NCBI RefSeq assembly: GCF_006345805.1
Contig: NC_042997.1
Location: forward strand, 162,502,001-162,566,000
DNA length: 64,000 nucleotides
Direction of reading: 5' to 3'
From: Octopus sinensis
Taxonomy: Eukaryota
Below the pieces are notes generated by a model. That model saw only the letters and a program-made list of their open reading frames with translations. It was not told the origin of the DNA and made no database searches. Positions 13,749 through 56,142 of the stretch are shown piece by piece. Each line of letters starts with the position of its first letter. The first letter of the stretch is position 1. Both the position numbers and the translations under genes were made by a program.

Positions 13749-13782
<34 letters not shown>

Positions 13783-14689: not shown

Positions 14690-14746
<57 letters not shown>

Positions 14747-14903
14747 CACTCTACGATGAACCACTTCTACCTAGCTTTGATAGGCAGCCTCAACACCAAC
14801 GGGCTTTCAGTTGCAATCCTTGCCGGAGTTTTAGTGGTAAATCAAATCGAGCACTTATAGTACCTTCCTTATTACATTACGACATTTGACGAAAATCCTT
14901 TAC

Positions 14904-14934
<31 letters not shown>

Positions 14935-16432: not shown

Positions 16433-16467
<35 letters not shown>

Positions 16468-24962: not shown

Positions 24963-26195
24963 GTGAGGGTCGGCTGAAAAGTTCATAGGCTGATTGAGAT
25001 ACTCTCATGGAATATGACCAAATGTGCTTTAGTTTTCAACATAGTCCTCCTTGCGCTCCACACGCTTCGTCCATCGGAGTTGCAGTGCTTGGATCCCATT
25101 GGTAAAGAAACTTCAGCTCGTTAGTCTAACAAGTCAGATATGACGTTATCATCGCTGCGATACTGCTTCCCAGCCAAGTGTTTTTTTCATGCTGGGTAAC
25201 AGATGATAGTCAGATGGGGTTAAATCAGGAGAATAGGGAGGGTGATCAATCAGTTCAAAGCCACACACACGCACAGCAGCCTGGAGCATTGTCCTGATGA
25301 AACGAACCCTTTTTGTCAGTTTTCCTTGGCATTTGGTCTTGATAGCCTTTCGTAGCTACCTCAGTAAGTTGGCATGCTATTCTCCATTAATGGTGTGGCC
25401 CTTTTCAAGATAGTTAATAAACACATTGTCTTTTGTATCCCAAAACACTGAGGCCATTACATTCCCTGAAGATGAAACGACCTTAGCTTTCTTTGGAGCA
25501 GGTGAGGAGGAGTGTTTCCACTGCAGGGATTGTCTTTTTGTCTCTGGCTCAAAGTAGTGAAGCCAACATTCATCTTGGCTTGGGAAACGTTCAATGAAAC
25601 CAGCTGGATCTATTTCAAACAATGTCAGATCTTCCCGGGATGTGATCAGCCTGGTTCACTTTTGATTTGGTGTTAGAAGTTATGACACCCACTAAGCAGA
25701 AACCTTCGTCAAGCCAATTTCATTGTGCATAATATTATCAACGCTCTCGTGAGCTATGCTATTAACATTGGCTGTTTGATTTATAGTCAGTCGCTTGTCA
25801 TCTATCACCATATGGTGAACACGATCAATGTTCTCCTTGGTGGTGACAGTTGCAGGATGTCAAAACTTTGGGTCTTCTTCAAGATTTTCCCTTTCCCTCC
25901 TAAATTCAGTTGCCCTCTTTTGCACTGTTGACAAAACTGGAGCATCCCCTAATGTAGCAAGCATGTCAGCATGAATGTCCTTTTCCTGCAGGGGTTTGAT
26001 AACATCACGATGCGAAATTTAGTCCATTTTCAAGAAAAGTTGCTAATAGTTACTTTTGAAGTCTTCTTTGAACAGTCAAATGTCAGTTTACCTGGAAAGA
26101 AACAATGCGATTATTGACAAGAAGTGTTGAAATTAATGTACGCAAGATTTCACAGCTGTAGCATCATACTTTCATAGTCAGCCTTATGAACTTTT
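24961..26195 (-). mobile_element. Decayed mariner (D34D-type) DNA transposon
   Basis: Transposase pieces DECWLHYFEPETKRQS...KVMASVFWD-like, HQDNAP, HPPYSPDLTPSDY; imperfect TIRs aaaagttcata(a)ggctga at both ends. Confidence 0.88.
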
Positions 26196-35800: not shown

Positions 35801-36090
35801 AAAGTGTTGTGACATCCAGCCTGGAAAATCTCGAGACCGCAGCCACAAACAGGGATTCCTGTAGGTCAATCACCAACACTGCTGCAGCTGCCTTTGAGAA
35901 GGATAGCCGGCTATGCCTCGCAGACACAAGAGACAGACATTACTGGGTCACATCCTCCTCAGTCCTTAACACAGATTATCAGTGTCCAACCTGCGGGCGC
36001 TGTGTGCTTCCGGCTGCGGAGCCACGAGCGTTCTCACTACTGACTGCTGAGACCACAGACTATGTCTTCATCGGAGATCGATGGACTACC
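32882..36090 (+). mobile_element. Decayed RTE/BovB-like LINE with many stops and frameshifts
   Basis: Fragments LIIGT*NVR, NYRGI, QCGFRPG, VDLTKAF, FRYLGS, YKAVVLYTLLYGCE, LRWIGH, C-terminal CPTC finger; RTE-type 3' end. Confidence 0.9.
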
Positions 36091-39325: not shown

Positions 39326-40233
39326 TTGAATATAAAATTATAGGCGCGCACACATATACACTAACACACCAGAATTTCTTCAAACTTCCAAGTTTCATTT
39401 TGTAGATTTGACGGGTGTCACTATATATGTGTGCGACAACCAACTTAAAAAAAAAATTTCATTAAATTCTAATATATTGTAATCTACACCATCTGAAGCC
39501 TATGTGTAGAAAATTTCATTAAAAAAATTATCCATTTTTCTGAAAGTTATGAGGAAATAAAATCGGGGGTAGGGCACAATTGTGGAGGTATGACGTATTT
39601 TCACACACGCAAAGGAATCAGTCAAATTATTTTCCATTTTGAAAATGTTTCTAATTCGGGGTTTAAACTCCAGGATACTCGAAGACTGGTAAGCGAGACG
39701 CTGTGATATGAACTCACGCCAATAAATTCATAAGCTGATATTTTATTCACGGTTAATCAGTAAGTTTTAAAATGCAATTATATAAACCTGTATTCTCTGA
39801 TAATCCAACAAGTACAAACTGAAACTTGGAAAGAAAGAACTTTTCTGTACCCAAGACGACCGTTAAGTTTACATCAAGTTTGTTTATATTTTTAAACAAG
39901 ATCGTCGTTTTATCCCCGGAGTTGCATTTTACTGAAACTAATCAAAATAAAATTCTGAACATAATATTCATCTAAATATTTAAATATTCCAAAAGGAATA
40001 TTTAAATTGTATATTTTTTGTTTAAGCGTTATATGATTTAAATTATCTGTAATTCTATAATACGAAGCTATGACTTGAAATAAACTATATCAAAGCGCCA
40101 GTTTACGAACTATAATGGCAAGTTGCGACAGGTTGTTGATAATGTTGCTATGACTAAAATAATCAACTGAAATTTGTGATTTGTCGATTATATTCTGTAA
40201 ATATGCAATATTTGGATGTTTGCAGAAAGTGCG

Positions 40234-40279
40234 ATGGGCGAATATGGCACAGAAAACCTTCACCATCAAATCAAGATGG
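40234..40279 (+). CDS. TBC1D31: Probable TBC1D31 first coding exon (ATG at 40234, or ATG at 40276)
   Basis: Ends ...AAG ATG G|gtaatt. Phase 1 joins exon 54748 to give M(40276)AATQALKEK; an in-frame upstream ATG adds MGEYGTENLHHQIK. Assigned on splice-phase logic only. Confidence 0.45.
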
Positions 40280-42570
40280 GTAATTTAAATATTTTTTCCT
40301 TTCTCTGTTTCCGTTAATTAAGTTCTAGGTAACATTTTAAAGTAAGCCTTGACTTAATCGTTGAAATATCCTATCGGTATATTTCTAGTTATAAATGGAT
40401 CCTTTTCAACTGAATCTTAGACTATGCAATGGAAATAGAAGTATAGAATATATAATTATTTAGTGATCGCAAGGCTTCTGCTTTTATAAGAGATGTGACA
40501 TAAGTAAAATGAACTGAAGTTGTTTACTATTCAGGTTCGAAGTTGATTCACGGTCTATATATTATCTGGGATTTATATTCTGTCTTTCTTTAATATTCAT
40601 TTTTTATAAGGCCACCAGGCTTCAGATTTTATGTGACTAGAGAAAGTTGTGATCTTCATGTCTTTCCCTATACAATTTTGTGCGAGTGAAATTATGAGTT
40701 CTGTCCAGAGTCGAAACCGAGTGGAAAACACGCTTGGAAATGTTTTCTCTCAAAACATATTTCTTTCACTACAAAACATATTTCTTCAATCTCAAGTATT
40801 TTTAACATTGGTAATTTAATCCCTAATATTTTTTTTAAACAACACACTTAACCCTATTATTTCTGACGATTGAAACACTGGAAATTATCACACCCAACAT
40901 TTAACATTTATTAGTGGGTCACCCTTCAAATTATGGTATTTAGACTCAGGAGAAAATACAAACAAGCCAAAATAACAGAAGAATAAAATACCGAGCACGA
41001 ACCAAGTTTCAAATATTACATATGCAATCATTTCTCTTTAATTTTCAAATACTTATTTACAAAGATTAGTATTGTTTGATCAAGTGCATAACTGATTCCA
41101 CAGGAATCTCTACTATACTGGATTAAAGAATACTACCCTTGTTAAATATATATCTGTAGTAATTACATATTTTATTCTTAAAAATAAAAATCATTGTTAA
41201 ATATACATAACTGAAGCATTATCGTTTGTTTCTTCTGAAAATTTAATGACTTTCGTGATTGTTGTATTCTATTGCTCTGGTTTCTAAATTACTTTCGGGG
41301 TTAACGGCCATAATATGAAGGGTCACTGATTAATGATTATATGGCAATGAAATCTCATTAACAGCATTCAGAAAATAGCTATTACATAATTAAATAGCAA
41401 TTCATCAACATTTTTGTCGTATGATGCAATTCTTCGGATTCCTTCACATTCCGCGAATAATCGAAACACTGTTTTTGCCATACAGTGATAGCCAATAATT
41501 GAAGCTGTTTAACAACTCATTAGACCTATGATCAATAGCTTTTTTTTTTCAGACGAGGCTATCTCAGGCTACATAACTCAATATGTCCTTCCATTTTTGA
41601 AAAAACAGTAGGGTGTGATTTCAGAAAAATTGAGCTGCTATTTTTAACAGCTCATTGTCTGGAGGCGGTGGGTAAAGAGACACTATTGATAAGAATGACG
41701 CACAGATAGGATCCCGAAATCCAACTTTCAGTAACACAACATTACTCCTAATTCTAAAATTTCTAACTGGTACAAAACCACATGTATGTGTATATGTAGG
41801 GTGAGAGATGAGTTAATTAGATCAGCTTCGGTACTTGACTGGTACTTATTTTTCACTCCCAAAAGTATAAAAAGCAAAGTTGACTGCAGAGGAATTTGAG
41901 CTCAGAATGTAAAAGGCTGTAACTAAATGTTGTAAGGCATTTTATTGCACATCATAAAATTTTCTTGCTCTGCCTTTCAGTACAATATGTAACAGTGGTG
42001 TTGTTGTTTAACCCCAGGTCAAATCTGGTCAGAATTTTCTCAGAGAGCAGAGATATTGTATTTTGAGATTGAGTGACTACTTGGAAATACATGGCACACT
42101 ATACAAGCAGGCTTGACCATTGTCTTTTCCGAGGCATGAAACTAATAGCTGCTTGAATTTAAATTTTGTGCATCTTAAATGGTGTTATACATACACACAC
42201 ATTATCATCATCATCATCCTTTTGACATCTGCTTTTCCATCTTTGACCAGATAGTTTTTCTGCAACCAATCCTCGTCTGTTATCAGGATAGAAATATGTC
42301 TCTATGCCCTGACATGTTTGTGTGAAACACTGGAAATGAATGATACCACTTATATGGAAATGACACATTTGCAACTATTATGCAATGTGAAGACAAGGAG
42401 CCACAAACACATGCACATGCATTATACATATATACATAGGTACATACATACGGGAATACACTCACAAAGCCCAGTTATAGAAGAGAGCACTTTCCCTAGT
42501 TGCGATGCAGGAGGAAACAGAAACAGAAACCATGTTGGTGGGAAGCAAGCTTCTTAACCACAACCATGCC

Positions 42571-42610
<40 letters not shown>

Positions 42611-42758
42611 CTTTATTTTAAGCAGCAGAAAATTCAACAAAATCTGTTACTCTGAGTTTCTCGTTGCCGTTCATCAGACAGTTTTTGCTGTCTGATGAAC
42701 GGCAATGAGAAACTCAGAGTAACAGATTTTGTTGAATTTTCTGCTGCTTAAAATAAAG
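42611..42758. repeat. Near-perfect palindrome (71-bp arms, 6-nt loop), Penelope-like terminal-repeat remnant
   Basis: Arms 42611-42681 and 42688-42758 differ at one position. Confidence 0.9.
42688..42725 (+). ncRNA. Minimal type I hammerhead motif (right arm of a palindrome; mirror copy on the - strand at about 42644-42681)
   Basis: cugu CUGAUGA a cg gcaa ug a GAA ACUC a GAGU A acag; stem I cugu/acag, GNRA-capped stem II, GUA triplet, A-A at 10.1-11.1. Confidence 0.6.
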
Positions 42759-42844
42759 CATATTACTCTACTACTGGTATTTGAGTACTCTTTTTTCCAC
42801 CTTGTTTCACATTTATGTGTTTACTGCGGTATATATATATATAG

Positions 42845-43056
42845 TTAGTTATATATAGTTTCTCCTTCCGGTCTTTCAAAATGTGACCTCGTGTGTACCG
42901 TTGGCGATTTTTTTTCTTCTGTCTTCCCTTCTCCTATGTTTCTGATGAAGAGCTCCGCTCAAAACGTTAAACCCTCCTTCTTCCCTTCTTTCCTGAGAGT
43001 CCAATAATACTATATTTGTTCCACGTCCTCGCGTGGCTGTGTTTTCTTGTTTGGAT

Positions 43057-43060
<4 letters not shown>
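42845..43060 (+). mobile_element. Penelope-like terminal-repeat remnant (related copies at about 5400-5640 and 49988-50100)
   Basis: Shared gttggcgattttt...gagc-nnn-gctcgaaacgt...ccctgagcg sequence in three places, each in (TA)n. Confidence 0.55.
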
Positions 43061-43093
<33 letters not shown>

Positions 43094-43228
43094 AATATGT
43101 ATATATATGTGTATGTATATTGCACTCTCTCACCTTACTATTCTTATGCCTCATTATCACCATGGGCTCCTTGAGAGCGGTCAGCTAAAAGTTTTTTGTG
43201 CATTTTGATGTCGACATAAGTTTCCTTG

Positions 43229-43313
43229 ATTTTCCTGAAGAGAAATCTGCATAATGTACTCCTTATTCCTTCGGAATTAGGAATATGCAGCCTTCGAAAC
43301 ATATGTCGAGAAT
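43229..43313 (+). ncRNA. Type I hammerhead ribozyme, canonical core
   Basis: Stem I attttc/gagaat; CUGAAGA (43235-43241); stem II closed by G-C (GAA/UUC, then ctgcata/tatgcag); GAAA (43296-43299); palindromic stem III ACAUAUGU; GUC triplet, cut after 43307. Confidence 0.85.
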
Positions 43314-43711
43314 AAAGGATATTTGTTAACTAGTCGTGCAACTCCATTCTTTGATATACTTATAATTTTAAAATAAACATACAAATTTCCGCACGAAGAC
43401 ACGTAGTCTATGCCCTAGGGACATAGCTTCAACCGTGTTCTTTCTGATGTGAATTTGCTACCCAGGTATCGGTTATCTTTCGAATTATCCTTAATAAGAT
43501 AATTCATTCCATTACTCAAATATATATATATATATGTGTGTATGTAGATATATGTGTATGTATATATATATGTGTGTATATTTATATATATGCGTATGTA
43601 TATATATATATGTATGTGTGTGTATGTATATATATATGTGTATATATATATGTGTATATATATATATATGTGTGTGTGTTTGTATATATATATATATATA
43701 ATTATATATAT

Positions 43712-43760
<49 letters not shown>

Positions 43761-43781
43761 ATATATAATATATATATATAT

Positions 43782-46700
43782 GATTTTGATTTTGATTTTT
43801 CCAGTTTCAAACCATTTGGTTTGCTACATGATTTTACCTCACGAATGCTTTTTAGCAACTGCCATTTGGTGCATGAGAGAGTTCGATGCAGCTGCCCTCA
43901 TCTGCACCTCCTGCCGTGAAGTTGGTTCATCCGGGACACCTGACAGGAAGAGATCCAGTCCTATTTTAAAGACATCCGCATCTACACCATGCAGGTCCCT
44001 CAGGTTCTTTGGGAGGATATTGAAGAGCTGTGGGCCTCTGAAGCCCAGGCTATCACAGTATCTTGTCCTACATCTTGATGGCAAATTTGGAGTCCTTGGT
44101 ACCACGCAGTGGCGCCCGGTTCTGGCATTTGTGTGACTCTCGATGCCAAAGTTTGGGACAAGTCCTTCCAGGATCTTCCAGATATATATTATGGCATATC
44201 TTTCTCGCCTACACTCCAAGGAATAGAGTTTTAATCTCTTGAGTCTTTCCCAGTAGCTTATATGCTGCACAGAGGCTATCTTCTTCGTGTAGCTTCGTTG
44301 GATCGCCTCAAGTTCTGTGATCAACTTGACACTGGATGGTGACCATAGCTGAGAGCAATATTCAAAGTGGCTTAGGACAAGTGTCTTCCAGAGGACCATC
44401 ATGGTTTCTTGTTCTCTTGTTCTAAAGGTTCTAAGAATCCATCCGGCCAGCCGTCTACATTTCATTGCCAGTTTAGCAACATGTACATGAAAGGTCGCGT
44501 CATCACTCATGTGAATACCCAGGTCACGCACTGATTGTGCCTCTGGGATTGCAATCCCTCCGGGTCCAGTGTATTCATTGGGTATTGCATTCAGTTTTGC
44601 ATGCTGATAGCATAAAGCTTGAAACTTTTCAGCATTGAACTGCATGCTATTCTTTTCAGCCCACTTGTATATTTTGTCCAGCTCACATTGCAGGTGCTTA
44701 GTGTCTTCAGGGTTCTGTATTGCCTGTGAAACTTTTGTATCATCTGCATAACTTGTGATCGTGGCTCTCTGCGTGGCTGAGGGCATGTCTGAAAGGGCCA
44801 TTATGAACAGTAGTGGTCCCAAAACAGTGCCCTGCGGAACACCGCTCACTATTTGCGTGTTAATGGAAGTGGCCCCATTGGCTACTACCACCTGACTTCT
44901 ATTCTTCAGAAAGTCATGAAGCCATTCTCCCAATTTTCCAACTACGCCAAGATCACGCAGTTTGTGACATATCATTCCATGATCGACTTTATCAAAGGCC
45001 TTTGCAAAGTCGAGATATATCACTTCCACATTTGTGTGGTTGAGCAGTCGTTTCAACACCCAGTCATAGTGTTGTAGGAGCTGAGTTAAGCAGCTTCTTC
45101 CTGGTCGGAAACCATGTTGGGTGTCAGGCAGCAAGTCATTTTCTTCAAGGAAGGTGATTAGTTTCCTTCTGACTATTCGTTCCATAACCTTGCTGATGTG
45201 TGAGGTTAGAGAGATAGGTCTGTAGTTCTTGGCCTCCGCTCTGCTACCTCCTTTATGAATAGGGCATATTTTACCCTCCTTCAGTTTTCTTGGAAGTTTG
45301 CCAGTTGCAAGGAAGCTCTGAAAGAGAGACTGCAGTGGTCTTGCTAGGACTCTCTTACATACTTTTAGAAGGATTGCCGGGAATCCATCGGGGCCAGTAG
45401 CTGAGTTTGTTTTCATCTCATCTATAGCCTTTATTACATTGTCTTCTTTATATTGATGTAATCAATCATCGCCGCCTCTGACCCCATATCTGCAGTGGTG
45501 AAGAAGTCAGTTGGATTGCTGATTTGGAAATGCCCAAGGGGTGGGGTGAAAACACTCTTGAATTGCTCATTTAGTATTTCACTTACCCTCATTGGATTTC
45601 CTGTGAGTGTGCCATCCCTTTCAAGGAGTGGCCCTATCCTACAGTGCACCGTAGCTGTTTCTTTGGAATACCTGTAGAAAGCTCTGGGGTTAGATTTTAT
45701 GTTGTCTATAGCCCAGGCTTCTTTGTCTGCTCTTTCCTTTTCATGGGAGAGTTGCAGACCTTTTTCAATTTCCAACAGTTTCATTTTCAGGCGGGACTTT
45801 TCATTGCTTTCAATTTGTTTGTTTAGGCGATTTGAAATTTTGTATGCCGTCTCATTAGAAGTTTCCTCTCTCTGGGGATTTTGTTCTTGTGTACAGTGGC
45901 CTTTCTCTCTGGGACACATTTGTAGCATATGGCTTGCATTACAGACATGAATTGTTGAAGTTTCACGTCGATGTCTGGCGAGGAGAGACACTCAGGCCAG
46001 TTTTGTTTGAGGATCTCTTTCTCAATTTGTTTCCAGTTTGCCTTATGGAAGTTCAAGCTGGAAAGATTCTGAGGGTTTCTTGTAGGCTGCATGTCCATGC
46101 TTTCCTTTGGCCCATACATGGTCAGCTCTACCATGTTGTGATCCGAGAGTAGTGTCGGTGTCACTTTCACATTATAGATGAGATCCATATTATTTGTGAA
46201 GCAGAGATCCAGTGTGTTACCTGCCCTGGTTGGTTGGAGTATTACTTGCTCCATGTACAGGGTGTTGATGAGGTTCAGGAGGGACCTCGCTTGTCCTCGT
46301 TCACATCTTGTCATTCCTGGGAGAGAAAGGCCCTCGGGCCATCTGACATTGGGTAGATTGAAGTCTCCCATAAGAAGTACACTTATGTGTTGTTCTAATG
46401 TGATTAGAACTTCTTCTATTTTTATAAGGCAGTCTTCAAACTTGCCTACATGGCTTGGGGCATCTGGAGGGCGATATGTAGCACACACAACTACATCAAG
46501 TTGCCTTATATATACAATTAGTGTGTCACACACCGAGTTTGAGTATGACAAAAGGACCTGGGGTGTGAGGTCCTCACGGATGTACATAGCAACTCCTCCA
46601 TGACTCCTTTCTTTTCTGTCAGTCCGTAGTACAACATACTGTGGTATGTGTAATTCTGCATCTGCTATGTCCAGTTTCAGGTGCGTTTCCTTAAGTGCTA

Positions 46701-46790
46701 TGCATAAGGCTTGATTGCATGCAACAAAGTCTCTCAAGAACGGGATTTTTGTCCTGTTACTGAGTGTTTGCAGTCCTCTGATGTTCATGT
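43782..46790 (-). mobile_element. CR1-clade LINE, 5'-truncated at the start of the endonuclease, two frameshifts
   Basis: NIRGL, YRPP, GDFNLP, LDLCFTN, SDHN; YRPISLTS, QHGFRPGRSC, LDFAKAFDKV, GVPQGTVLGP, YADD; short (AAAATC)n tail; (TA)n on both flanks. Confidence 0.92.
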
Positions 46791-47316
46791 ACTTATATAT
46801 ACATATATATAAGTACATATGTGTATATACACATATATGTATATATATATGTGTATATATATATATATATAATATATATATAAATGTATATATATACATA
46901 TACATATATATATACATATATTTATGTATATATATATATATATATAAAGCTGAAGCTGTCTGTGTATGGCAGGTTTGGTGGTAGCCTTCAACTAACACTA
47001 TCTCCTCTAAGACCCTGCGGCGCAAGTTGACCAAAATTGAGAGTATGATAGATGAAGGCTTGCTCCTCCTTCCGTAGAAGAAAAAATTCAAATCAGACCA
47101 TGTTAACACCAAAAATTATTTACATGAAATTATTTTCTATGAAAATCCTTATTTTTTTACTGCTGTATCGCCATTTTTCTGTGTATTTCAACCAGAAAAA
47201 TGTTCACTTAAAGAAAATAACAAGCTACATAATGCAAAATTTTTACTTTTCAAAAATTCCAATTCTAAAGGGTTGAAACAAATCCGAACGACGGTGGGCG
47301 TTACTGCTAGTATACG

Positions 47317-47358
<42 letters not shown>

Positions 47359-47420
47359 AACCCATGCTAGCATGGAAAACGGACGTTAAACGATGGTGAT
47401 GATATATATATATATATATA

Positions 47421-47598
47421 TTATATATAGAGGGCATTATACATACATGCCAGGAGGCATTATACACACATGCCAAACGCTAAGAGGGACAATCAGTCAT
47501 TTCTACCATTTGGTAGAAATGACTGATTGTCCCTCTTAGCGTTTGGCATGTATGTATAATGCCTCCTGGCATGTATGTATAGTGCCCTCTATATATAA
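47421..47598. repeat. Near-perfect palindrome (88-bp arms, 2-nt loop)
   Basis: Centre ttctacca-tt-tggtagaa; two mismatches. Confidence 0.9.
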
Positions 47599-47717
47599 AT
47601 TAATATGTTCAATAAGAAATAATTATTTTCGAAATTTTTTCTCTTATGAGGTTTTTACGCTATCTACCTGACAATTTCTTGTTAAGTTTTCCTTATTAAG
47701 TAGTTGTCCTTAATTGC

Positions 47718-47750
<33 letters not shown>

Positions 47751-47971
47751 ATATATATACACATATATATATATATGTATATATATACATTTATATATAT
47801 GTATATATATATATATACATACATAAATATAAGAGAGTGACCACTATATGGTCGACTCTAGCACTAAAAATAGACCCGCTATGGTATTAGCCACTAAAAA
47901 TTGTTTCCAAGGAGAATTAACACAACATTTAATGTAAACGAGGCAAGTGAAAAACAACGAAAATATAGATT

Positions 47972-48048
47972 AACTCTGGACAATTGTTTCGCTATTAATG
48001 TAATATGCAATTTTACTTACACAACATCTATAGGTCATCAGCAGAATT
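47972..48048 (-). ncRNA. Type I hammerhead ribozyme motif (C-C at 10.1-11.1)
   Basis: Minus strand: aattctg CUGAUGA ccuau...auagc GAA ACAAUUGU C cagagtt; 7-bp stem I, palindromic stem III, GUC triplet. Confidence 0.72.
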
Positions 48049-48207
48049 TGTCTAAAATACAATTTATTAAATCGCACGCTAAATTCAACACAACCCTTAT
48101 TTGTAATATATATATACATATATATGTATATATATATATATACATATATATGTATATATATATATATACATATATATGTATATATATATATATAATATAT
48201 ATATATA

Positions 48208-48360
48208 CTCACGGAGTGGTTGGCGTTAGGAAGGGCATCCAGCTGTAGAAACATTGCCAAATTAGACTGGAGCCTGGTGCAGCCTTCTGGCTTCCCAGAA
48301 CCCCGGTCGAACCGTCCAACCATGCTAGCATGGAGAACGGACGTTAAACGACGATGATGT
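48208..48360 (+). mobile_element. Short retroposed element sharing the RTE 3' end (others at 47357-47403 +, 48661-49000 +, about 62532-62890 -)
   Basis: ggagtggttggcgttaggaagggcatccagctgtagaaac...ggacgttaaacgatgatg, same in type as 60674-60833. Confidence 0.85.
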
Positions 48361-48573
48361 ATGTATATATAAAATTAATTAAGGGTAGGAATTGATATTT
48401 ATCAATTAAAACCAGTGGTCTAGCATATTAAAAAGAATCCAAAGATTAAAATATTTATATATACCAATTAAGGACTGAACACGAAAAGTGGACAGTCAAC
48501 ATGCTAGATATAGACGTCAAATCGCCATTCTCCACAAAGATTATGTTCTCAAATCAAACTCAGCACATATGTA

Positions 48574-48629
<56 letters not shown>

Positions 48630-48995
48630 TATATACATATATGTATATGTATATATATACATAACAGCTCCACCTGAGCGGGATCACTGTCAGAGCAGCT
48701 GTCTGGCTTCCATGCCGGTGAGCACGTAAAAAGTACCATTTGAGAGTGATCGTTACCAGCGTTGCCTTACTGGCACATGAACAAAATATTCGAGCAAGGT
48801 CATTGCCAGTACCACTGGACTGACTTCTGTGCAGGTGGCACATAAAGAAACACATTTCGAGCGTGACCGTAGCCTTCATCTGGCTGTGTAAGCTCTGCTA
48901 GATCAGATTGGAGCCTGGCGCAGCCATCTGGTTTGCCAGTCCTCAGTCAAATCGTCCAACCCATACTAGTATAGAGAGCGGACATTGGATGATGA

Positions 48996-49050
<55 letters not shown>

Positions 49051-49055
49051 TATAT

Positions 49056-49833
49056 ATAAGGGCTTAGTAAAATAAATTACTTTGCCACATACTGAACTCA
49101 TTAGAAATAGCAGCTAAAGAAATTTCTTCAGCTATTTCTAATACTTAAAGAAGATCTCTCTCAGATAGTGTTTGCCTAAACCAACTCACAAAGGTATGGG
49201 GAAAAAAACATTAAAAAATCAAGTGCAAAGGTTATTTGAGAACGTACGTTTCTAGATTAGTCAATTCGACATTTCTTTCGTCAGCTCAGAATTCCTTGAA
49301 TCGGATTTGGGAACACTGAAAGTCGGGAGCATACCCTTTCGGCTTCTCATCACCTCTAGAATTCTGCTCGAACTAAAAGTGCTATCAAATCCGAATATGC
49401 AAGCGAAGAATTTCTGCTCTCCCCTTTCCACCAGCGTGGGTTAAAATTGACAAACACCATGTATTAACGGTGAAAACCGCAGCATTTAACAGAGAGAGAT
49501 GAATTATAATTTCAACAATTGAGGGTAAAATTAATTAATTATTAATCCATTTCACCAAGTATTCAGTATGTAAGGGACTATTTTAGGCAAATTCAAAACA
49601 TATTACATTATATATAAGGGCTTAGTAAAATAAATTACTTGCCACATACTGAACTCATTAGAAATAGCAGCTAAAGAAATTTCTTCAGCTATTCTAATAC
49701 TTAAAGAAGATCTCTCTCAGATAGTGTTTGCCTAAACCAACTCACAACCAATTCGCCTAAAATGGTCCCTTTACATACTGAATACTTGGTGAAATTGATT
49801 AATAATTAATTAATTTTACCCTCAATTGTTGAA

Positions 49834-49834
<1 letters not shown>
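49056..49834. mobile_element. Penelope-like remnant with direct and inverted terminal repeats
   Basis: Direct repeats 49056-49190 / 49614-49746; inverted repeats about 49510-49594 / 49749-49834; contains a hammerhead motif. Confidence 0.6.
49234..49292 (-). ncRNA. Degenerate type I hammerhead motif
   Basis: Minus strand: tgag CUGACGA a aga...guc gaauu gac...ucu a GAA ACGUACGU U cuca; palindromic stem III; stem II partly mismatched. Confidence 0.5.
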
Positions 49835-49870
<36 letters not shown>

Positions 49871-50112
49871 ATATATATACACACACTGTGCTTGAGGAGA
49901 CCTATAGAGTCAAGTACATCAACATCAAAAAATCAAATGGAAGTTGTAGTTGTGATACCTGTGCTGGTGGCACGTAAAAAGCACCATCCGCTCGAAACGT
50001 TAAACCCTCCTTTCTTCCTTCTTTCCTGAGCGTCCAATAAACTATATTTGCTCCACATCGCATTGTGTGTTTTTTTGTGCTTTCTTGTTTGGATTAACTA
50101 TAAATATATATA

Positions 50113-50165
<53 letters not shown>

Positions 50166-50606
50166 TATATATATATATATATGTATATAATAATTATATA
50201 TATATATATATGTATATATAGTATATATGTATATATATATATGTATATATATGTATATATGTATATATATAATATGTATATATATGTATATATGTATATA
50301 TATATATGTATATATATAATATATATATATATATGTATATGTATATTGTATATAATGTATATAGATATTATAATATGTATATATGTATATATATATTGTA
50401 TATATATGTATATATGTATATATATATATGTATATATATGATATATGTATATATATATATGTATATATATGTATATATGTATATATATATATTGTATATA
50501 TATGTATATATATATATATGTATATATATGTATAATGTATATATATTATATTGTATATATATTATATATATAGTATATATATATATATTGTAATATATAT
50601 ATATAC

Positions 50607-50941
50607 GTGAAAGCGCATGGCTCAGTGGTTAGAGCGTCGAGCTTACGATCGTGAGGTTGTGAGCTCTAATCCCGGACCGGGCTGCGTGTTGTGTTCTCGA
50701 GCAAGGCACTTTATTTCACGTTGCTCAGTTCACTCAGCTGTAGAAATGAGTTGCGACGTCACTGGTGCCAAGCTGTATCGACCTTTGTCTTTCCCTTGGA
50801 TAACACTGGTGGCGTGGAGAGGGGAGGCTGGTATGCATGGGCGACTGCTGGCCTTCCATAAAAAAACCTTGCCCAGACTTGTGTCTAGGAGGGTAACTTT
50901 CTAGGTGCAATCCCATGGTCATTCATGACTGAAGGGGGTCT
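50607..50941 (+). mobile_element. tRNA-derived SINE (related heads at about 23645-23930 and 28715-28870)
   Basis: tggctcagtggttagagcg head; gagcaaggcactttatttcacgttgctc core; inserted in (TA)n. Confidence 0.8.
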
Positions 50942-50996
50942 TTATATATATATATGTAATATATATATATGTATAATATATATGTATATATATATG

Positions 50997-51077
<81 letters not shown>

Positions 51078-51088
51078 GTATATATATG

Positions 51089-51119
<31 letters not shown>

Positions 51120-51187
51120 GTATATATAATATATGTATATATATGTGTATATATATATTATATGTATATATATATATATGTATATAT

Positions 51188-54100
51188 AGGAGATAAATAA
51201 AAATATATGCATACATACAAACATATATGTACGTACCTACATCTACATGTATATATACATGCATATAAAATAATTATACGGAAGTACAGGACATCACAAT
51301 AAGACGTAGAAACAGAAAAAGCCAAAAAACAAAAAACAAAGAAAACGGAAAACGAAAAACAAATACAGGACAGGTTACACAAGGACAAAACCCCCGTCAT
51401 CAGCTGTCGCTAGAGGAGTCAGGCATGTTTCGAAGGCATAACAGAACACCAATCCAATAGGCCTTCCTGCGAGAGAATTAAAATAAAATTTCAAGCAGCG
51501 GGGCACAATGAGTACGAACACAAACAAGACGTGACAATAAGACTGCAAAATTAAAATACATGTACAAAAACAAACACAAGAGGACGAACGAAAAAGCCTT
51601 TTTTCTGGCATAGACAAACAATAAAACTGCAAAAATAAAAATACATGTACAACAAGTACAATTAGTTACAAAACGAGAAAATAACAAGAATACTATACAG
51701 GAAATTAACCACACAAGGGGACGAACGAAGAAGCCTTTTGCTGGCAAGGACGAAAGTGTAGTAGCAGCGCGTGGAGGCAGTTTTTCAATAGTGGTAACCA
51801 CGTGTAAAGGAATTTTGTTTTATAGGCAAGGAAGAGGGAAGGAGGAGGGGGACACGCGGCGAAGAGAGAGGAGGAGGGGGAGGGAGAAAGATTGAAGAGG
51901 TTAAAGCAAAGGGAGAGAGTACCGCATCTTTAATATAATAATATAATATAAAAAAAGGGGGACCAAGAAGTGGATCGAAACGACGAATCGGAACGAACCT
52001 GATGCGGGGCGCTGTCAGACAATAAGGAGATAAATAAAAATATATGCATACATACAAACATATATGTACGTACCTACATCTACATGTATATATACATGCA
52101 TATATAAATAATTATACGGAAGTACAGGACATCACAATAAGACGTAGAAACAGAAAAAGCCAAAAAACAAAAAACAAAGAAAACGGAAAACGAAAAACAA
52201 ATACAGGACAGGTTACACAAGGACAAAACCCCCGTCATCAGCTGTCGCTAGAGGAGTCAGGCATGTTTCGAAGGCATAACAGAACACCAATCCAATAGGC
52301 CTTCCTGCGAGAGAATTAAAATAAAATTTCAAGCAGCGGGGCACAATGAGTACGAACACAAACAAGACGTGACAATAAGACTGCAAAATTAAAATACATG
52401 TACAAAAACAAACACAAGAGGACGAACGAAAAAGCCTTTTTTCTGGCATAGACAAACAATAAAACTGCAAAAATAAAAATACATGTACAAAAAGTACAAT
52501 TAGTTACAAAACGAGAAAATAACAAGAATACTATACAGGAAATTAACCACACAAGGGGACGAACGAAGAAGCCTTTTGCTGGCAAGGACGAAAGTGTAGT
52601 AGCAGCGCGTGGAGGCAGTCTTTTCAATAGTGGTAACCACGTGTAAAGGAATTTTGTTTTATAGGCAAGGAAGAGGGAAGGAGGAGGGGGACACGCGGCG
52701 AAGAGAGAGGAGGAGGGGGAGGGAGAAAGATTGAAGAGTTAAAGCAAAGGGAGAGAGTACCGCATCTTAATATAATAATATTATATAAAAAAAGGGGGAC
52801 CAAGAAGTGGATCGAAACGACGAATCGGAACGAACCTGATGCGGGGCGCTGTCAGACAATAAGGAGATAAATAAAAATATATGCATACATACAAACATAT
52901 ATGTACGTACCTACATCTACATGTATATATACATGCATATATAATAATTATACGGAAGTACAGGACATCACAATAGACGTAGAAACAGAAAAAGCCAAAA
53001 AACAAAAAACAAAGAAAACGGAAAACGAAAAACAAATACAGGACAGGTTACACAAGGACAAAACCCCCGTCATCAGCTGTCGCTAGAGGAGTCAGGCATG
53101 TTTCGAAGGCATAACAGAACACCAATCCAATAGGCCTTCCTGCGAGAGAATTAAAATAAAATTTCAAGCAGCGGGGCACAATGAGTACGAACACAAACAA
53201 GACGTGACAATAAGACTGCAAAATTAAAATACATGTACAAAAACAAACACAAGAGGACGAACGAAAAAGCCTTTTTTCTGGCATAGACAAACAATAAAAC
53301 TGCAAAAATAAAAATACATGTACAAAAAGTACAATTAGTTACAAAACGAGAAAATAACAAGAATACTATACAGGAAATTAACCACACAAGGGGACGAACG
53401 AAGAAGCCTTTTGCTGGCAAGGACGAAAGTGTAGTAGCAGCGCGTGGAGGCAGTCTTTTCAATAGTGGTAACCACGTGTAAAGGAATTTTGTTTTATAGG
53501 CAAGGAAGAGGGAAGGAGGAGGGGGACACGCGGCGAAGAGAGAGGAGGAGGGGGAGGGAGAAGATTGAAGAGGTTAAAGCAAAGGGAGAGAGTACCGCAT
53601 CTTTAATATAATAATATTAATATAAAAAAAGGGGGACCAAGAAGTGGATCGAAACGACGAATCGGAACGAACCTGATGCGGGGCGCTGTCAGACAATAAG
53701 GAGATAAATAAAAATATATGCATACATACAAACATATATGTACGTACCTACATCTACATGTATATATACATGCATATATAAATAATTATACGGAAGTACA
53801 GGACATCACAATAAGACGTAGAAACAGAAAAAGCCAAAAAACAAAAAACAAAGAAAACGGAAAACGAAAAGCAAATACAGGACAGGTTACACAAGGACAA
53901 AACCCCCGTCATCAGCTGTCGCTAGAGGAGTCAGGCATGTTTCGAAGGCATAACAGAACACCAATCCAATAGGCCTTCCTGCGAGAGAATTAAAATAAAA
54001 TTTCAAGCAGCGGGGCACAATGAGTACGAACACAAACAAGACGTGACAATAAGACTGCAAAATTAAAATACATGTACAAAAACAAACACAAGAGGACGAA

Positions 54101-54360
54101 CGAAAAAGCCTTTTTTCTGGCATAGACAAACAATAAAACTGCAAAAATAAAAATACATGTACAAAAAGTACAATTAGTTACAAAACGAGAAAATAACAAG
54201 AATACTATACAGGAAATTAACCACACAAGGGGACGAACGAAGAAGCCTTTTGCTGGCAAGGACGAAAGTGTAGTAGCAGCGCGTGGAGGCAGTCTTTTCA
54301 ATAGTGGTAACCACGTGTAAAGGAATTTTGTTTTATAGGCAAGGAAGAGGGAAGGAGGAG
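51188..54360. repeat. Tandem array, 837-bp unit, about 3.8 nearly identical copies
   Basis: Unit starts aggagataaat at 51188, 52025, 52862 and 53699; (TA)n on both sides. Confidence 0.95.
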
Positions 54361-54386
54361 GATATATATATATGTATATATATATG

Positions 54387-54417
<31 letters not shown>

Positions 54418-54458
54418 GTATATATATATGTATATATATATATATGTATATATATATG

Positions 54459-54491
<33 letters not shown>

Positions 54492-54573
54492 GTATATATA
54501 TATGTATATATATAATATATATATGTATATATGTATATATATATATGTATATATATATATATGTATATATATA

Positions 54574-54606
<33 letters not shown>

Positions 54607-54747
54607 ATATATATATGTATATATATGTATTATATATATGTATATATATGTATATATATGTATATATATCTATGCATATATATCTATGTATGCATATATA
54701 TATATATATTTGGTGGAATTAATATAGTTGATGTTTAACTTAAACAG

Positions 54748-54796
54748 CTGCTACCCAAGCTTTGAAGGAAAAATATGCAGGATGGTGTACATACAG
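54748..54796 (+). CDS. TBC1D31: TBC1D31 short upstream coding exon
   Basis: taaacag|CT GCT ACC...TAC AG|gtagtt encodes ATQALKEKYAGWCTY. Its phase-2 end joins 55984 in frame, and its L-x-x-K-x-x-G pattern resembles human DLGNKESG. Confidence 0.65.
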
Positions 54797-55253
54797 GTAG
54801 TTCTATATAGATATAGAACTATTGTCATCACCATCGTTTTTAGTTTGTTTTCCCATGTTATCATAAATTGGAGGAGTTTTCAGAAGCAGTACCCCCCCTC
54901 TCTCTCTCCCCACCTAAGTACTCTTTTAGATGCCTCTTACTATATGCAAGGACACAATGTACCTATTCTAAAATAGCTACATGCACAGTAAGATTTAAAT
55001 AGAGAGAGATTTTGAATATGGTGTTATTGAAAAGAGATTGCAAAGAAGTAGTTACATGCCTGCTTTTTATTAACTCTTTTACAGCCAGATTTCTACCTAT
55101 TTGTTTCATTTAGTATTGAAAACTATCAGGAATTTAGAGAGATGTACTAAAATATCTAACTTTTTCTTTGTTAAACTAATGTTTAACTCCTTATTGTTCC
55201 TGTTACTCTGTCAACTATATTGCTTATTTATTCATATTGTTTTGAATCATTCA

Positions 55254-55625
55254 GGCGTAGGAGTGGCTGTGTGATAAGTAGCTTGCTTACCAACCACATG
55301 GTTCCGGGTTCAGTCCCACTGCATGGTACCTTGGACAAGTGTCTTCTGCTATAGCCTCGGGCTGACCAAAGCCTTGTGAGTGGATTTGGTAGATGGAAAC
55401 TGAAAGAAGCCCATCGTACATATGTGTGTCTGTGTTTGTCCCCCCAACGTCGCTTGACAACCGATGCTGGTGTGTTTACATCCCTGTAACTTAGCGGTTC
55501 GGCAAAAGAGACCGGTAGAATAAATAGTAGGCTTACAAAGAATAAGTCCTCAGGTCGATTTACTCGACTCAAGGCAGTGCTCCAGCATGGTCACAGTCAA
55601 ATAACTGAAACAAGTAAAAGAGTAA
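55254..55625 (+). mobile_element. tRNA-derived SINE family D (partial copies at about 27220-27415 +, 29360-29720 -, 32670-32830 +, 42440-42575 -)
   Basis: ggcgtaggagtggctgtg...gttcagtccc head; tail gactgaaacaagtaaaagag. Confidence 0.82.
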
Positions 55626-55983
55626 ACGTTTGTTGCTCTGAGAGTTTGATGATGTGATTGCTTATTCTTAGAATAACATTGTAGTGTAGGCGTGAGAAGC
55701 CAGATCTGATCAGTTTGAACATAAAACAGGTAGAATATTTGGGCTGGATATGGCCAGTTTAAATGCTAAAGGGTTAAAACATATCTTAACAAAATTCTTA
55801 TATAAAACTTTAATAGAAAGTTTTAAATTAAATATGATCAAGAATTTATGTATCTTAGTAATGAACAGCCACAGTGGGGTGATATCAGAACGATTAAACT
55901 TTTTAATATTTCGTTATTATAAACTGAAGTCACTCATTTTTGCACTTCATGTCTTTATGTTTCTCTCATTTCTGATATTGCAG

Positions 55984-56142
55984 AATAATTGTTCAAGTAT
56001 GTCACAGTGTTTTAGATTGCTCAGTCACTTATCCTTCTCGGACAATCCGCTTCCTCTATGCATCCTTTGATCGTACTGGAGAACAATTTATTGCTGCTGA
56101 CCATCATGGAAATATTTTTGCTTTCAACTTAAATACAAACTG
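55984..56142 (+). CDS. TBC1D31: TBC1 domain family member 31 (WDR67), WD40-region exon
   Basis: Strong acceptor (ttctgatattgcag) and donor (TG|gtgaga). Translation IIVQVCHS...TIRFLYASFDRTGEQFIAADHHGNIFAFNLNTN matches the recalled human TBC1D31 N-terminus IIVNIIHN...LRFLNVAFDGTGDCLIAGDHQGNIYVFDLHGN. Confidence 0.88.

What the first reader, a model, noticed from the sequence alone, without database searches (positions are those of the whole stretch)
43229..43313. Fully canonical hammerhead ribozyme sense to the TBC1D31 pre-mRNA
Seen: every conserved core base is present (CUGAAGA, G10.1-C11.1, GAAA, A15.1-U16.1, GUC), with a 6-bp stem I, a long extended stem II and a palindromic stem III. The predicted cut is between 43307 and 43308. 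Established: active intronic hammerheads occur in animal genes. Inference: it could cleave the nascent transcript, in cis or by pairing of two transcripts, and affect splicing of this long intron.
Basis: partly seen in the sequence, partly recalled or inferred. Interest (0 to 1): 0.8.

Follow-up and report, generated by a model that had tools for sequence, protein, structure and literature searches.

The report
Lone hammerhead ribozyme motif in intron
A complete type I hammerhead ribozyme motif does sit, in the sense orientation, in the first intron of a TBC1D31-like gene. It looks like a lone leftover of the ribozyme-carrying retroelements common in invertebrate genomes, and it is probably too weakly folded to affect the gene.

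Summary
Window 43229-43313 (+) has every invariant hammerhead core base. It has a 6-bp helix I, a 54-nt hairpin as helix II and a 2-bp helix III with a palindromic AUAU loop. The cut site is GUC|G at 43307/43308. It is the only such motif in the 64 kb. Rfam Hammerhead_1 matches it end to end (30.2 bits, E 3.4e-6) once the speed filters are relaxed, but this is below the gathering score of 34. My null models expect 0.0004-0.002 such motifs per window.

It lies 3,028 nt into a 15.7-kb GT-AG intron between two in-frame exons that match my recalled human TBC1D31 residues 1-74.

I read it as a solitary type I hammerhead of the Penelope-like-element/retrozyme kind. There is no second copy, no tandem repeat and no neighbouring Penelope-type gene. 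A decayed minimal hammerhead in a (TA)n-embedded repeat lies 290 nt upstream. An upstream 14-mer that is 13/14 complementary to the 3' half of the core dominates predicted folding in longer transcripts (P 0.97-0.997).

Efficient cleavage and an effect on splicing are therefore unlikely and remain untested. No octopod sequence was reachable, so neither copy number nor conservation could be checked.

The parts
43229..43234 (+). Helix I, 5' strand (AUUUUC)
   Evidence: Pairs with 43308-43313 (6 bp, one G-U).; Rfam alignment.
43235..43241 (+). Core, 5' half: C3 U4 G5 A6 A7 G8 A9 (CUGAAGA)
43242..43295 (+). Helix II, a 54-nt extended hairpin. It has G10.1-C11.1 and a 3-bp base, a 2x2 internal loop, a 7-bp helix, and a distal 9/10-bp helix capped by UUCG
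   Evidence: -17.2 kcal/mol, z = -4.5, 0 of 1000 shuffles as stable. P(mid-helix pair) 0.995 in every context tested. Rfam treats 50 nt of it as a local insertion where the consensus has 10.
43296..43299 (+). Core, 3' half: G12 A13 A14 A15.1 (GAAA)
43299..43306 (+). Helix III: the palindrome ACAUAUGU. In cis it gives A15.1-U16.1 and C15.2-G16.2 closing an AUAU loop. Between two copies it gives 8 bp
   Evidence: The cofold of two copies forms the 8-bp intermolecular helix, -59.8 against 2 x -24.5 kcal/mol.
43307..43308 (+). Predicted cleavage site: C17 (43307) | G1.1 (43308), in GUC|G
   Evidence: Position follows from the motif. Cleavage itself was not tested.
43308..43313 (+). Helix I, 3' strand (GAGAAU)
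43218..43227 (+). Extension of helix I, 5' side. It pairs with 43315-43324 (5 bp + 4 bp) beyond a 1x1 G.A mismatch that lies 6 bp from the core
   Evidence: The MFE of 43218-43324 contains it. The full hammerhead fold is -23.7 against an MFE of -24.5 kcal/mol.
43315..43324 (+). Extension of helix I, 3' side
43210..43223 (+). Upstream competitor ('anti-hammerhead'): UCGACAUAAGUUUC. It is 13/14 complementary to 43296-43309, which covers G12-A14, helix III, the cleavage site and the first 2 nt of helix I
   Evidence: alignment. P of the alternative pair 0.97-0.997 in 181- and 405-nt contexts; ddG 4-6 kcal/mol.
40203..40279 (+). Host gene exon 1, coding part (MQYLDVCRKCDGRIWHRKPSPSNQDG), followed by the donor GG|GTAATT
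   Evidence: tblastn with my recalled human TBC1D31 residues 1-26: 58% identity, E 2e-5. Sequence.
40280..55983 (+). Intron 1 (15,704 nt, GT-AG). The hammerhead cut site lies 3,028 nt from its 5' end and 12,676 nt from its 3' end
55984..56142 (+). Host gene exon 2 (..IIVQVCHSVLDCSVTYPSRTIRFLYASFDRTGEQFIAADHHGNIFAFNLNTN..), in frame with exon 1
   Evidence: tblastn with recalled residues 27-74, E 5e-8. Acceptor and donor.
42861..43052 (+). Context, not part of the ribozyme: copy A of a ~200-bp repeat embedded in (TA)n. It carries a decayed minimal hammerhead at 42938-42972 (GUUU-CUGAUGA-A-GAGC-UCC-GCUC-AAAA-CG-UU|AAAC, with G12 changed to A)
   Evidence: The other copies, at 5417-5632 and 49980-50090, keep GCUC-GAAAC.

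Best explanation
This is a genuine type I hammerhead ribozyme sequence of the metazoan retroelement kind. That kind is carried by Penelope-like elements and their non-autonomous 'retrozyme' derivatives. Here it is a single dispersed copy, in the sense orientation, in intron 1 of a TBC1D31-like gene.

Shown:
- The core is intact.
- Helices I, II and III exist.
- The architecture is the published one for animal type I hammerheads in helix I (6 bp, then an internal loop) and helix III (2 bp plus a 4-nt palindromic loop).
- It departs from that architecture in helix II, which is a 54-nt hairpin instead of about 4 bp plus a loop.

Inferred:
- It descends from a retroelement insertion and is not a gene-specific invention.
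- In the pre-mRNA it is mostly held in an inactive rod-like fold, by the upstream complement of its 3' core half.
- Its weak helix III and the lack of a partner copy make it a slow ribozyme or an inactive one.
- Any cleavage therefore has little or no effect on splicing of the 15.7-kb intron.
For: - Motif anatomy and uniqueness in the window.
- Rfam Hammerhead_1 full-length match, 30.2 bits, E 3.4e-6. A control region searched the same way gave no hammerhead hit.
- Null expectations of 4e-4 to 1.7e-3 per window.
- Helix II stability, z = -4.5.
- In the 107-nt context the hammerhead fold is within 0.8 kcal/mol of the MFE.
- The published description of canonical animal hammerheads gives helix I as 6 bp and helix III as 1-2 bp with a 2-4-nt palindromic loop. 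It states that they act as dimers and that most copies are single and dispersed (PMC4209133; also PMC7229834).
- Cephalopod genomes carry Penelope elements, and 235 Rfam Hammerhead_1 loci were reported in the giant squid (PMC6962438).
- A second, decayed hammerhead-bearing repeat family is present in the same window, with one copy 290 nt upstream on the same strand.
- About 43% of dispersed retrozyme copies in Xenopus lie in introns (bioRxiv 10.64898/2026.07.22.740005).
- Competitor helix and the energy gap.
- A slow hammerhead in an intron does not block splicing: PMC2995048.
Against: - The Rfam score is below the curated gathering threshold (30.2 against 34), and the match was invisible to the default filters.
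- No homologous copy was found anywhere. There is none in the window or in the metagenome and viral collections. The protein-index tricks also failed. The claimed retroelement origin therefore has no direct support.
- No Penelope-type RT/GIY-YIG gene is nearby. The neighbouring ORFs are APE-type LINEs, and the closest is on the opposite strand.
- The flanking (TA)n runs are not informative for this motif, because such runs occur about every 400 bp throughout the window.
- Helix II is atypical, and no loop-loop tertiary contact can be recognised.
- Thermodynamic folding says nothing certain about co-transcriptional folding, so real activity could be higher than I infer.
Confidence: 0.6

Rival explanations
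1. Chance resemblance. The locus is one of many AT-rich imperfect hairpins in this genome, and the two internal-loop strands happen to spell CUGANGA and GAAA..UH.
For: - The Markov null extrapolates to roughly 10-150 loose-descriptor hits per 2.5-Gb genome.
- The window is rich in palindromes, for example 42610-42760.
- One 1-mismatch descriptor hit lies inside a coding exon on the minus strand and is surely chance.
- The Rfam score is under the gathering threshold.
- No relatives were found.
Against: - The per-window expectation is only 4e-4 to 1.7e-3. That figure excludes the helix II stability (0 of 1000 shuffles), the 9 extra helix I pairs and the palindromic loop III.
- The Rfam E-value of 3.4e-6 scales to about 0.002 for the whole window across all families. 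It scales to about 0.02 for this one family in a 2.5-Gb genome (my arithmetic).
- All 17 sequence-only matches in the large collections lack the helices.
Confidence: 0.12
2. A domesticated intronic ribozyme, comparable to the RECK and C10orf118 hammerheads of amniotes or the CPEB3 ribozyme of mammals. Regulated switching between the rod fold and the hammerhead fold would cut the nascent TBC1D31 transcript and tune how much mRNA matures.
For: - Sense orientation in the first, long intron.
- The core is perfectly intact while the neighbouring repeat-borne hammerhead has decayed.
- A specific 13/14 complement is placed to act as an off-switch.
- Precedents exist for conserved intronic ribozymes (PMC6155905, PMC3088659) and for a ribozyme competing with splicing (PMC10919898).
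Against: - There is no conservation evidence of any kind.
- Helix III is weak and there is no partner copy.
- The inactive fold is favoured by 4-6 kcal/mol.
- Slow intronic hammerheads do not impair splicing (PMC2995048).
- Intact dispersed copies of young repeats are common and need no selection to explain them.
Confidence: 0.08
3. Part of a retrozyme-like unit that can release a small RNA. The decayed minimal hammerhead at 42938-42972 and this motif face the same way, with would-be cut sites 339 nt apart. That spacing is the size of animal retrozyme monomers, so double cleavage once produced (or still produces) a ~340-nt RNA that a tRNA ligase could circularise.
For: - Same strand and 339-nt spacing.
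- Retrozyme monomers are 170-400 nt (PMC7229834).
- Chance expectation for a descriptor hit with at most 1 core mismatch is 0.05-0.07 per window, so about 5e-4 for one within 400 nt on the same strand (my arithmetic).
Against: - The upstream motif has G12 changed to A, which removes the general base.
- The two motifs share no sequence outside the core, and the interval is not a repeat of anything.
- The upstream motif belongs to an independent repeat, whose other copies have no such downstream partner.
- Rfam does not recognise it.
Confidence: 0.05
4. The functional or historical unit is the hairpin, not a ribozyme. It could be a foldback/MITE-type inverted repeat, an ADAR-editable duplex or a microRNA-like precursor.
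For: - Helices I and II together form a 107-nt imperfect hairpin.
- The 54-nt inner hairpin is very stable.
- There is a weak mir-202 match at 12 bits.
- A clear foldback palindrome lies 500 nt upstream.
Against: - The mir match has E about 3, which is noise.
- The 7-nt and 12-nt asymmetric internal loops are exactly the two hammerhead core strands, and a plain inverted repeat does not explain that.
- No second copy or terminal-repeat structure was found.
Confidence: 0.05

Closest known systems
Canonical metazoan type I hammerhead ribozymes (Rfam RF00163 Hammerhead_1), as found in newt satellite 2, Schistosoma Sm-alpha and animal non-LTR retrozymes
   Same: - Type I topology and identical core.
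- G10.1-C11.1 and A15.1-U16.1.
- 6-bp helix I followed by an internal loop.
- 2-bp helix III with a 4-nt palindromic loop.
- GUC cleavage triplet.
- Low-GC surroundings.
- Full-length alignment to the Rfam model (PMC4209133, PMC7229834).
   Different: - Helix II is a 54-nt hairpin with a 2x2 internal loop after 3 bp, instead of about 4 bp plus a conserved loop.
- No recognisable loop 1-loop 2 contact.
- A single copy, not a tandem array.
- The score is 3.8 bits under the Rfam gathering threshold.
Minimal hammerheads of Penelope-like element pseudo-LTRs (Cervera and de la Pena 2014)
   Same: - Dispersed, mostly solitary copies in invertebrate genomes.
- Palindromic 15.2-16.2 and loop 3, and a larger-than-usual helix II.
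- Low or dimer-dependent activity.
- A min-HHR of exactly this type, decayed, sits 290 nt upstream in a (TA)n-embedded repeat.
   Different: - The main motif has a real helix III and a 6-bp helix I.
- It has no bulged nucleotide between A9 and G10.1.
- No RT/GIY-YIG ORF or pseudo-LTR repeat is nearby.
Conserved intronic hammerheads of amniotes (RECK, C10orf118/CTCL, DTNB; Rfam HH9/HH10)
   Same: A sense-strand type I hammerhead inside an intron of a conserved protein-coding gene. It is of the same structural class as the retroelement hammerheads from which those are thought to derive (PMC6155905, PMC3088659).
   Different: Those are defined by deep orthologous conservation and proven self-cleavage. 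Neither is known here.
CPEB3 intronic HDV-like ribozyme
   Same: A self-cleaving motif in a long intron, where the cleavage rate relative to transcription of the downstream exon could set the mRNA yield (PMC10919898). Here the downstream exon is 12.7 kb away.
   Different: It is a different ribozyme class. CPEB3 is conserved and active, with a half-life of 2-3 min. Here the predicted fold disfavours the active form.

Membership tests
Hammerhead ribozyme (any type) | Invariant core: C3 U4 G5 A6 N7 G8 A9 ... G12 A13 A14 ... H17 (not G) | tested here: met
   CUGAAGA at 43235-43241, GAAA at 43296-43299, C17 at 43307.
Hammerhead ribozyme (any type) | Three helices around the core, with the G10.1-C11.1 and A15.1-U16.1 closing pairs | tested here: met
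   Helix I is 6 bp (plus 9 more). Helix II starts G-C and is a z = -4.5 hairpin. Helix III is A-U and C-G plus a tetraloop.
Hammerhead ribozyme (any type) | Site-specific self-cleavage giving 2',3'-cyclic phosphate and 5'-OH ends | not testable with these tools
   Needs in vitro transcription or end-specific RNA sequencing.
Rfam RF00163 Hammerhead_1 (type I) | Type I topology: helix I open, helices II and III closed by loops | tested here: met
Rfam RF00163 Hammerhead_1 (type I) | Covariance-model score at or above the curated gathering score (34 bits) | tested here: not met
   30.2 bits, E 3.4e-6, model 1-45/45, with a 50-nt local insertion in helix II. No hit at the default filters.
Canonical animal type I hammerhead (retrozyme/satellite type) | Helix I of 6 bp, and helix III of 1-2 bp capped by a 2-4-nt palindromic loop | tested here: met
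   6 bp, and 2 bp plus AUAU. Definition from PMC4209133.
Canonical animal type I hammerhead (retrozyme/satellite type) | Helix II of about 4 bp, whose loop contacts loop 1 through conserved nucleotides | tested here: not met
   Helix II is 54 nt: 3 bp, then a 2x2 internal loop, then about 17 more pairs. No conserved loop nucleotides are recognisable.
Animal non-LTR retrozyme | Tandem repeats of about 150-450 bp, each with a hammerhead | tested here: not met
   There is no direct repeat of 43116-43520 and no second intact hammerhead in the 64 kb. It could still be a 'monomer' derivative, which the literature describes as common.
Animal non-LTR retrozyme | [quoted passage not shown] | not testable with these tools
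   No transcriptome data are reachable.
Penelope-like element (hammerhead in a pseudo-LTR) | Flanks an ORF with a telomerase-like RT and a GIY-YIG endonuclease, same orientation, with the pseudo-LTR repeated | tested here: not met
   The neighbouring ORFs are Exo_endo_phos + RVT_1 LINEs, the nearest on the minus strand. No repeated flank was found.
Conserved intronic hammerheads (HH9/HH10-like domesticated elements) | Sense orientation within an intron of a protein-coding gene | tested here: met
   It lies between in-frame exons at 40203-40279 and 55984-56142 (+), with GT-AG junctions. The gene name comes from my recalled human sequence.
Conserved intronic hammerheads (HH9/HH10-like domesticated elements) | Conservation at the orthologous position across species | not testable with these tools
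   No cephalopod genome is in the searchable collections.

The most novel reading that the evidence does not exclude
The motif is a domesticated ribozyme switch in intron 1 of octopod TBC1D31. The upstream 14-mer holds it in an inactive rod. Transcription speed, a helicase or A-to-I editing of that duplex frees the hammerhead fold. Cleavage 12.7 kb ahead of exon 2 would then lower the yield of mature mRNA. This would be the first conserved gene-regulatory hammerhead in a protostome.
Probability: 0.06. Interest if true: 0.7.

Novelty: new member of a known kind. Interest (0 to 1): 0.3.

Why it matters
If active, it would add a cephalopod example to the short list of self-cleaving ribozymes that sit sense-strand in introns of conserved genes. 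Its built-in competitor helix would make it a natural test case for how such motifs are tolerated or used.

More probably it is one more dispersed retroelement hammerhead, which matters for two practical reasons:
- It shows that hammerheads with long helix II insertions fall just under Rfam's threshold and are lost entirely to the default speed filters. Genome counts such as the 235 loci reported in the giant squid are therefore probably underestimates.
- Together with the decayed minimal hammerhead in a (TA)n-embedded repeat, it points to hammerhead-bearing non-autonomous elements in this genome that have not been catalogued.

Tried and rejected
1. Whole-window Rfam at gathering threshold, and a 351-nt E-value search, found no hammerhead. 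Only the 114-nt search showed the match. The earlier misses were caused by the speed filters, so they do not count as negatives.

2. The simple pattern CTGANGA..GAAA..TH gave 18 matches against 9.7 expected and missed the real site, because helix II exceeds the gap I allowed. It was uninformative.

3. Homologues were sought in several ways. All of these searches came back empty, or gave only chance matches:
- Exact-product look-ups of an ORF across the motif and of the LINE ORF.
- Protein searches with the exon 2 peptide and with the translation through the motif.
- Two metagenome scans and one viral scan. The matches had no helix I.

4. I considered the flanking (TA)n/(TG)n runs as evidence of a Penelope-type insertion and rejected the idea. 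There are 84 such runs in the window with a median gap of 396 bp. The argument does hold for the separate upstream repeat, where all 3 copies share the same junction with (TA)n.

5. I asked whether the 7-nt ATGTCGA that recurs 95 nt upstream marks a degenerate tandem unit. No direct-repeat similarity exists (score below the shuffled mean). The relation is an inverted complement instead.

6. The CTGATGA..GAAAC strings at 42636-42733 are the two arms of a palindrome, with A.A at 10.1/11.1 and no proper helices. They are not a hammerhead.

7. There are no tRNA-like SINE heads nearby.

Full report
**1. What is there**

The 85 nt at 43229-43313 (+) read AUUUUC-CUGAAGA-[54 nt]-GAAA-CAUAUG-UC|GAGAAU.
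- Helix I is 6 bp with one G-U.
- The core has C3-A9, G12-A14, the A15.1-U16.1 pair and C17.
- Helix II starts with G10.1-C11.1.
- The predicted scissile bond is 43307/43308.
- Helix III is the 8-nt palindrome ACAUAUGU. In cis this gives two pairs closing an AUAU loop.

- Helix I continues beyond a 1x1 G.A mismatch for 5 + 4 further pairs (43218-43227 with 43315-43324). The MFE fold of the 107-nt segment therefore already shows helices I and II. The complete hammerhead fold is only 0.8 kcal/mol above the MFE.
- Helix II is a well-formed hairpin: a 3-bp base, a 2x2 internal loop, 7 bp, then a 9/10-bp helix with a UUCG loop. It folds at -17.2 kcal/mol against -6.7 +/- 2.3 for dinucleotide shuffles, and 0 of 1000 shuffles were as stable.

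**2. Is it more than chance?**

- A structure descriptor of my own finds this site and nothing else on either strand of the 64 kb. That holds when I also allow minimal hammerheads, the U3-A8 core variant and a bulge after A9.
- 160 Mb of first-order Markov sequence gave 1 hit with helix I >= 6 bp, which is about 4e-4 per window.
- 600 shuffles within 100-nt blocks gave 0.0017 per window.
- Extrapolated to a genome of about 2.5 Gb, the loose descriptor alone would give tens of chance hits. The extra features carry the argument: the stability of helix II, the nine further helix I pairs and the palindromic loop.
- Rfam release 15 found nothing in the whole window or in a 351-nt slice. On 114 nt, where its filters are laxer, Hammerhead_1 (RF00163) aligned to exactly 43229-43313. 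The match covers model positions 1-45 of 45, at 30.2 bits and E 3.4e-6. The only penalty is a 50-nt insertion in helix II.
- That score is 3.8 bits below the curated gathering score.
- By my arithmetic it corresponds to about 0.002 expected per window over all families. It corresponds to about 0.02 per 2.5-Gb genome for this one family.
- A neighbouring 111-nt region searched the same way gave no hammerhead match.
- 17 matches to the sequence-only pattern in the metagenome and viral collections all lacked helix I.
- I conclude the motif is real, with about a 0.1 residual chance of coincidence.

**3. Gene context**

- tblastn with the human TBC1D31 N-terminus, as I recall it, hit 40203-40280 (+) for residues 1-26 (58% identity, E 2e-5). 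It hit 55985-56140 (+) for residues 27-74 (E 5e-8).
- The first hit starts at an ATG and ends at GG|GTAATT.
- The second hit follows a polypyrimidine tract and CAG, and ends at TG|GTGAGA.
- Joining 40279 to 55984 keeps the reading frame (..NQDG-IIVQV..).
- The motif therefore lies in the sense orientation in a 15,704-nt first intron. It is 3,028 nt from the 5' splice site and 12,676 nt from the 3' splice site.
- The gene name rests on my memory. The protein database returned nothing for the exon peptide.
- Upstream of about 17.1 kb the window encodes a transglutaminase on the same strand.

**4. Surroundings**

- The intron is full of repeats.
- An APE + RVT_1 LINE lies at 43839-47115 on the minus strand, about 500 nt downstream. 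Another LINE lies at 56574-59725 (+).
- Neither is a Penelope-like element, and the nearer one is in the opposite orientation.
- The motif sits in a 405-bp unique segment between two TA/TG microsatellites. I first took this as a sign of Penelope-type insertion. Such runs occur 84 times in the window with a median gap of 396 bp, so it carries no weight.
- No other copy of the segment or of either half of the motif exists in the window.

**5. A second, decayed hammerhead nearby**

- Allowing one core mismatch, the descriptor finds GUUU-CUGAUGA-A-GAGC-UCC-GCUC-AAAA-CG-UU|AAAC at 42938-42972 (+).
- This has the published architecture of Penelope-element minimal hammerheads: a bulged base after A9, G10.1-C11.1, palindromic 15.2/16.2, and a 4-bp helix I (PMC4209133). 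The difference is that G12 is A.
- It lies in a ~200-bp repeat with three copies in the window: 42861-43052, 5417-5632 and 49980-50090 (nhmmer E 4e-58 to 6e-29).
- The other two copies read GCUC-GAAAC, so their 3' box is intact, but they have lost the 5' box. The family ancestor most simply had a complete hammerhead.
- All three copies abut (TA)n on both sides, with the same ..GGATTAAC-TATA junction. This fits the reported (TA)n target preference of Penelope-like elements (PMC8557442).
- Chance expectation for such near-hits is 0.05-0.07 per window. Rfam does not recognise it.
- This shows that hammerhead-bearing non-autonomous repeats populate this very intron, which raises the prior that the main motif has the same kind of origin.
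- The two motifs share no sequence beyond the core, and the other copies of the repeat have no downstream partner. I therefore treat them as independent insertions. The 339-nt spacing of their cut sites is a curiosity.

**6. How it probably behaves**

- Published work defines canonical animal type I hammerheads as helix I of 6 bp, helix II of 4 bp, and helix III of 1-2 bp with a 2-4-nt palindromic loop. It shows that the weak helix III makes most of them depend on a second copy in tandem to form a dimer with an extended helix III. It also shows that most genomic copies are solitary remnants (PMC4209133, PMC7229834, PMC3088659 Fig. S8 legend).
- Here helices I and III fit that definition and helix II does not.
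- Two copies would pair through the palindrome in silico (-59.8 against 2 x -24.5 kcal/mol). However, there is no second copy in the 64 kb.
- The segment 43210-43223 (UCGACAUAAGUUUC) is 13/14 complementary to 43296-43309. That target covers G12-A14, helix III, the cleavage site and the start of helix I.
- In 181-nt and 405-nt contexts the alternative helix has probability 0.97-0.997, and helix I falls to 0.03-0.002.
- Enforcing the hammerhead helices costs 4-6 kcal/mol.
- Such rod-like inactive folds are typical of viroid and retrozyme RNAs. Here the fold would also explain why a sense-strand ribozyme is tolerated in an intron.
- A slow hammerhead cutting an intron left splicing efficient in vivo. 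Only a fast ribozyme aborted it (Dye 2006 and Fong 2009, as summarised in PMC2995048).
- I therefore expect little or no effect on TBC1D31 splicing. This step is inference, because co-transcriptional folding could differ from the thermodynamic prediction.

**7. Comparison and novelty**

- The closest family is Rfam Hammerhead_1, the animal type I hammerheads of retrozymes and Penelope-like elements.
- It works like one and has every defining structural feature of a hammerhead. It misses the Rfam gathering score and the canonical helix II. It is not in a tandem array or next to a Penelope-type ORF.
- Cephalopods are known to carry such motifs: 235 Hammerhead_1 loci in the giant squid, which also has Penelope elements (PMC6962438).
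- In Xenopus about 43% of dispersed retrozyme copies lie in introns (bioRxiv 10.64898/2026.07.22.740005).
- It is therefore a new member of a known kind, with an unusual helix II and an unusual built-in competitor.
- The conserved intronic hammerheads of amniotes (PMC6155905) and the CPEB3 ribozyme (PMC10919898) are the models for the more interesting reading. That reading needs conservation data I could not obtain.

**8. Limits**

- No cephalopod sequence other than this window was reachable.
- Copy number, orthology, covariation, transcription and cleavage are all untested.
- Confidence is about 0.85-0.9 that this is a true hammerhead-derived sequence.
- Confidence is about 0.6 for the full explanation: a solitary retroelement relic that is largely inactive in the pre-mRNA.

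Noticed in passing
window 42861-43052, 5417-5632, 49980-50090 (all +): A ~200-bp repeat family with (TA)n on both sides and a shared ..GGATTAAC-TATA 3' junction. Copy A carries a Penelope-type minimal hammerhead with G12 changed to A (42938-42972). The other copies keep GCUC-GAAAC but have lost the 5' box. It is probably an uncatalogued hammerhead-bearing non-autonomous element.
   Followed up: partly
window 42610-42760: A 148-nt near-perfect palindrome (94.6% self-complementary), flanked by TTTATTTTA/TAAAATAAA. It is foldback/MITE-like. Both arms contain CTGATGA..GAAAC, but these do not form a hammerhead.
   Followed up: partly
window 43210-43223 versus 43296-43309: A 13/14 inverted complement of the 3' half of the hammerhead core sits 6 nt upstream of the extended helix I. 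For one position pair this is expected about 3e-5 by chance within 100 nt (my estimate). Whether it is a leftover of a rod-shaped parent RNA or a selected attenuator is unknown.
   Followed up: partly
window 2355-17099 (+): Exons of a transglutaminase gene (GQCWVF active-site exon near 7600; last exon ends about 17099), upstream of and on the same strand as the TBC1D31-like gene. Identified by eye from the translations; Pfam found no family in the one 69-aa exon peptide I scanned (7501-7707).
   Followed up: no
window 43839-47115 (-), 56574-59725 (+), 33172-35861 (+), 25152-26018 (-): Three APE + RT LINE copies, one of which also has a weak PHD-finger match below Pfam's cut-off, and a mariner-type transposase fragment. 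The 43839-45416 RT ORF is intact over 525 aa.
   Followed up: partly
window 51400-54330, flanked by (TA)125 at 50943-51188 and (AT)175 at 54362-54709: About four tandem copies of a unit of ~838 bp, enclosed by two very long TA microsatellites.
   Followed up: no
window 59975-60661: A 62-nt satellite in 11 copies (89% matches), with higher-order periods of 187 and 249 nt. Its unit (..GGTGGCACATAAAAACACCATCCG..) resembles the 5' part of copy B of the hammerhead-bearing repeat (49960-49990).
   Followed up: no
window 47421-47598: An 88-nt inverted repeat, 98% complementary, with a 2-nt spacer. It is a second foldback-type element in the same intron.
   Followed up: no
Rfam searches of the window: The same 85-nt hammerhead is invisible to cmscan on 64 kb and on 351 nt, but scores 30.2 bits on 114 nt. 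Filter settings, not the model, decide whether long-helix-II hammerheads are seen.
   Followed up: yes
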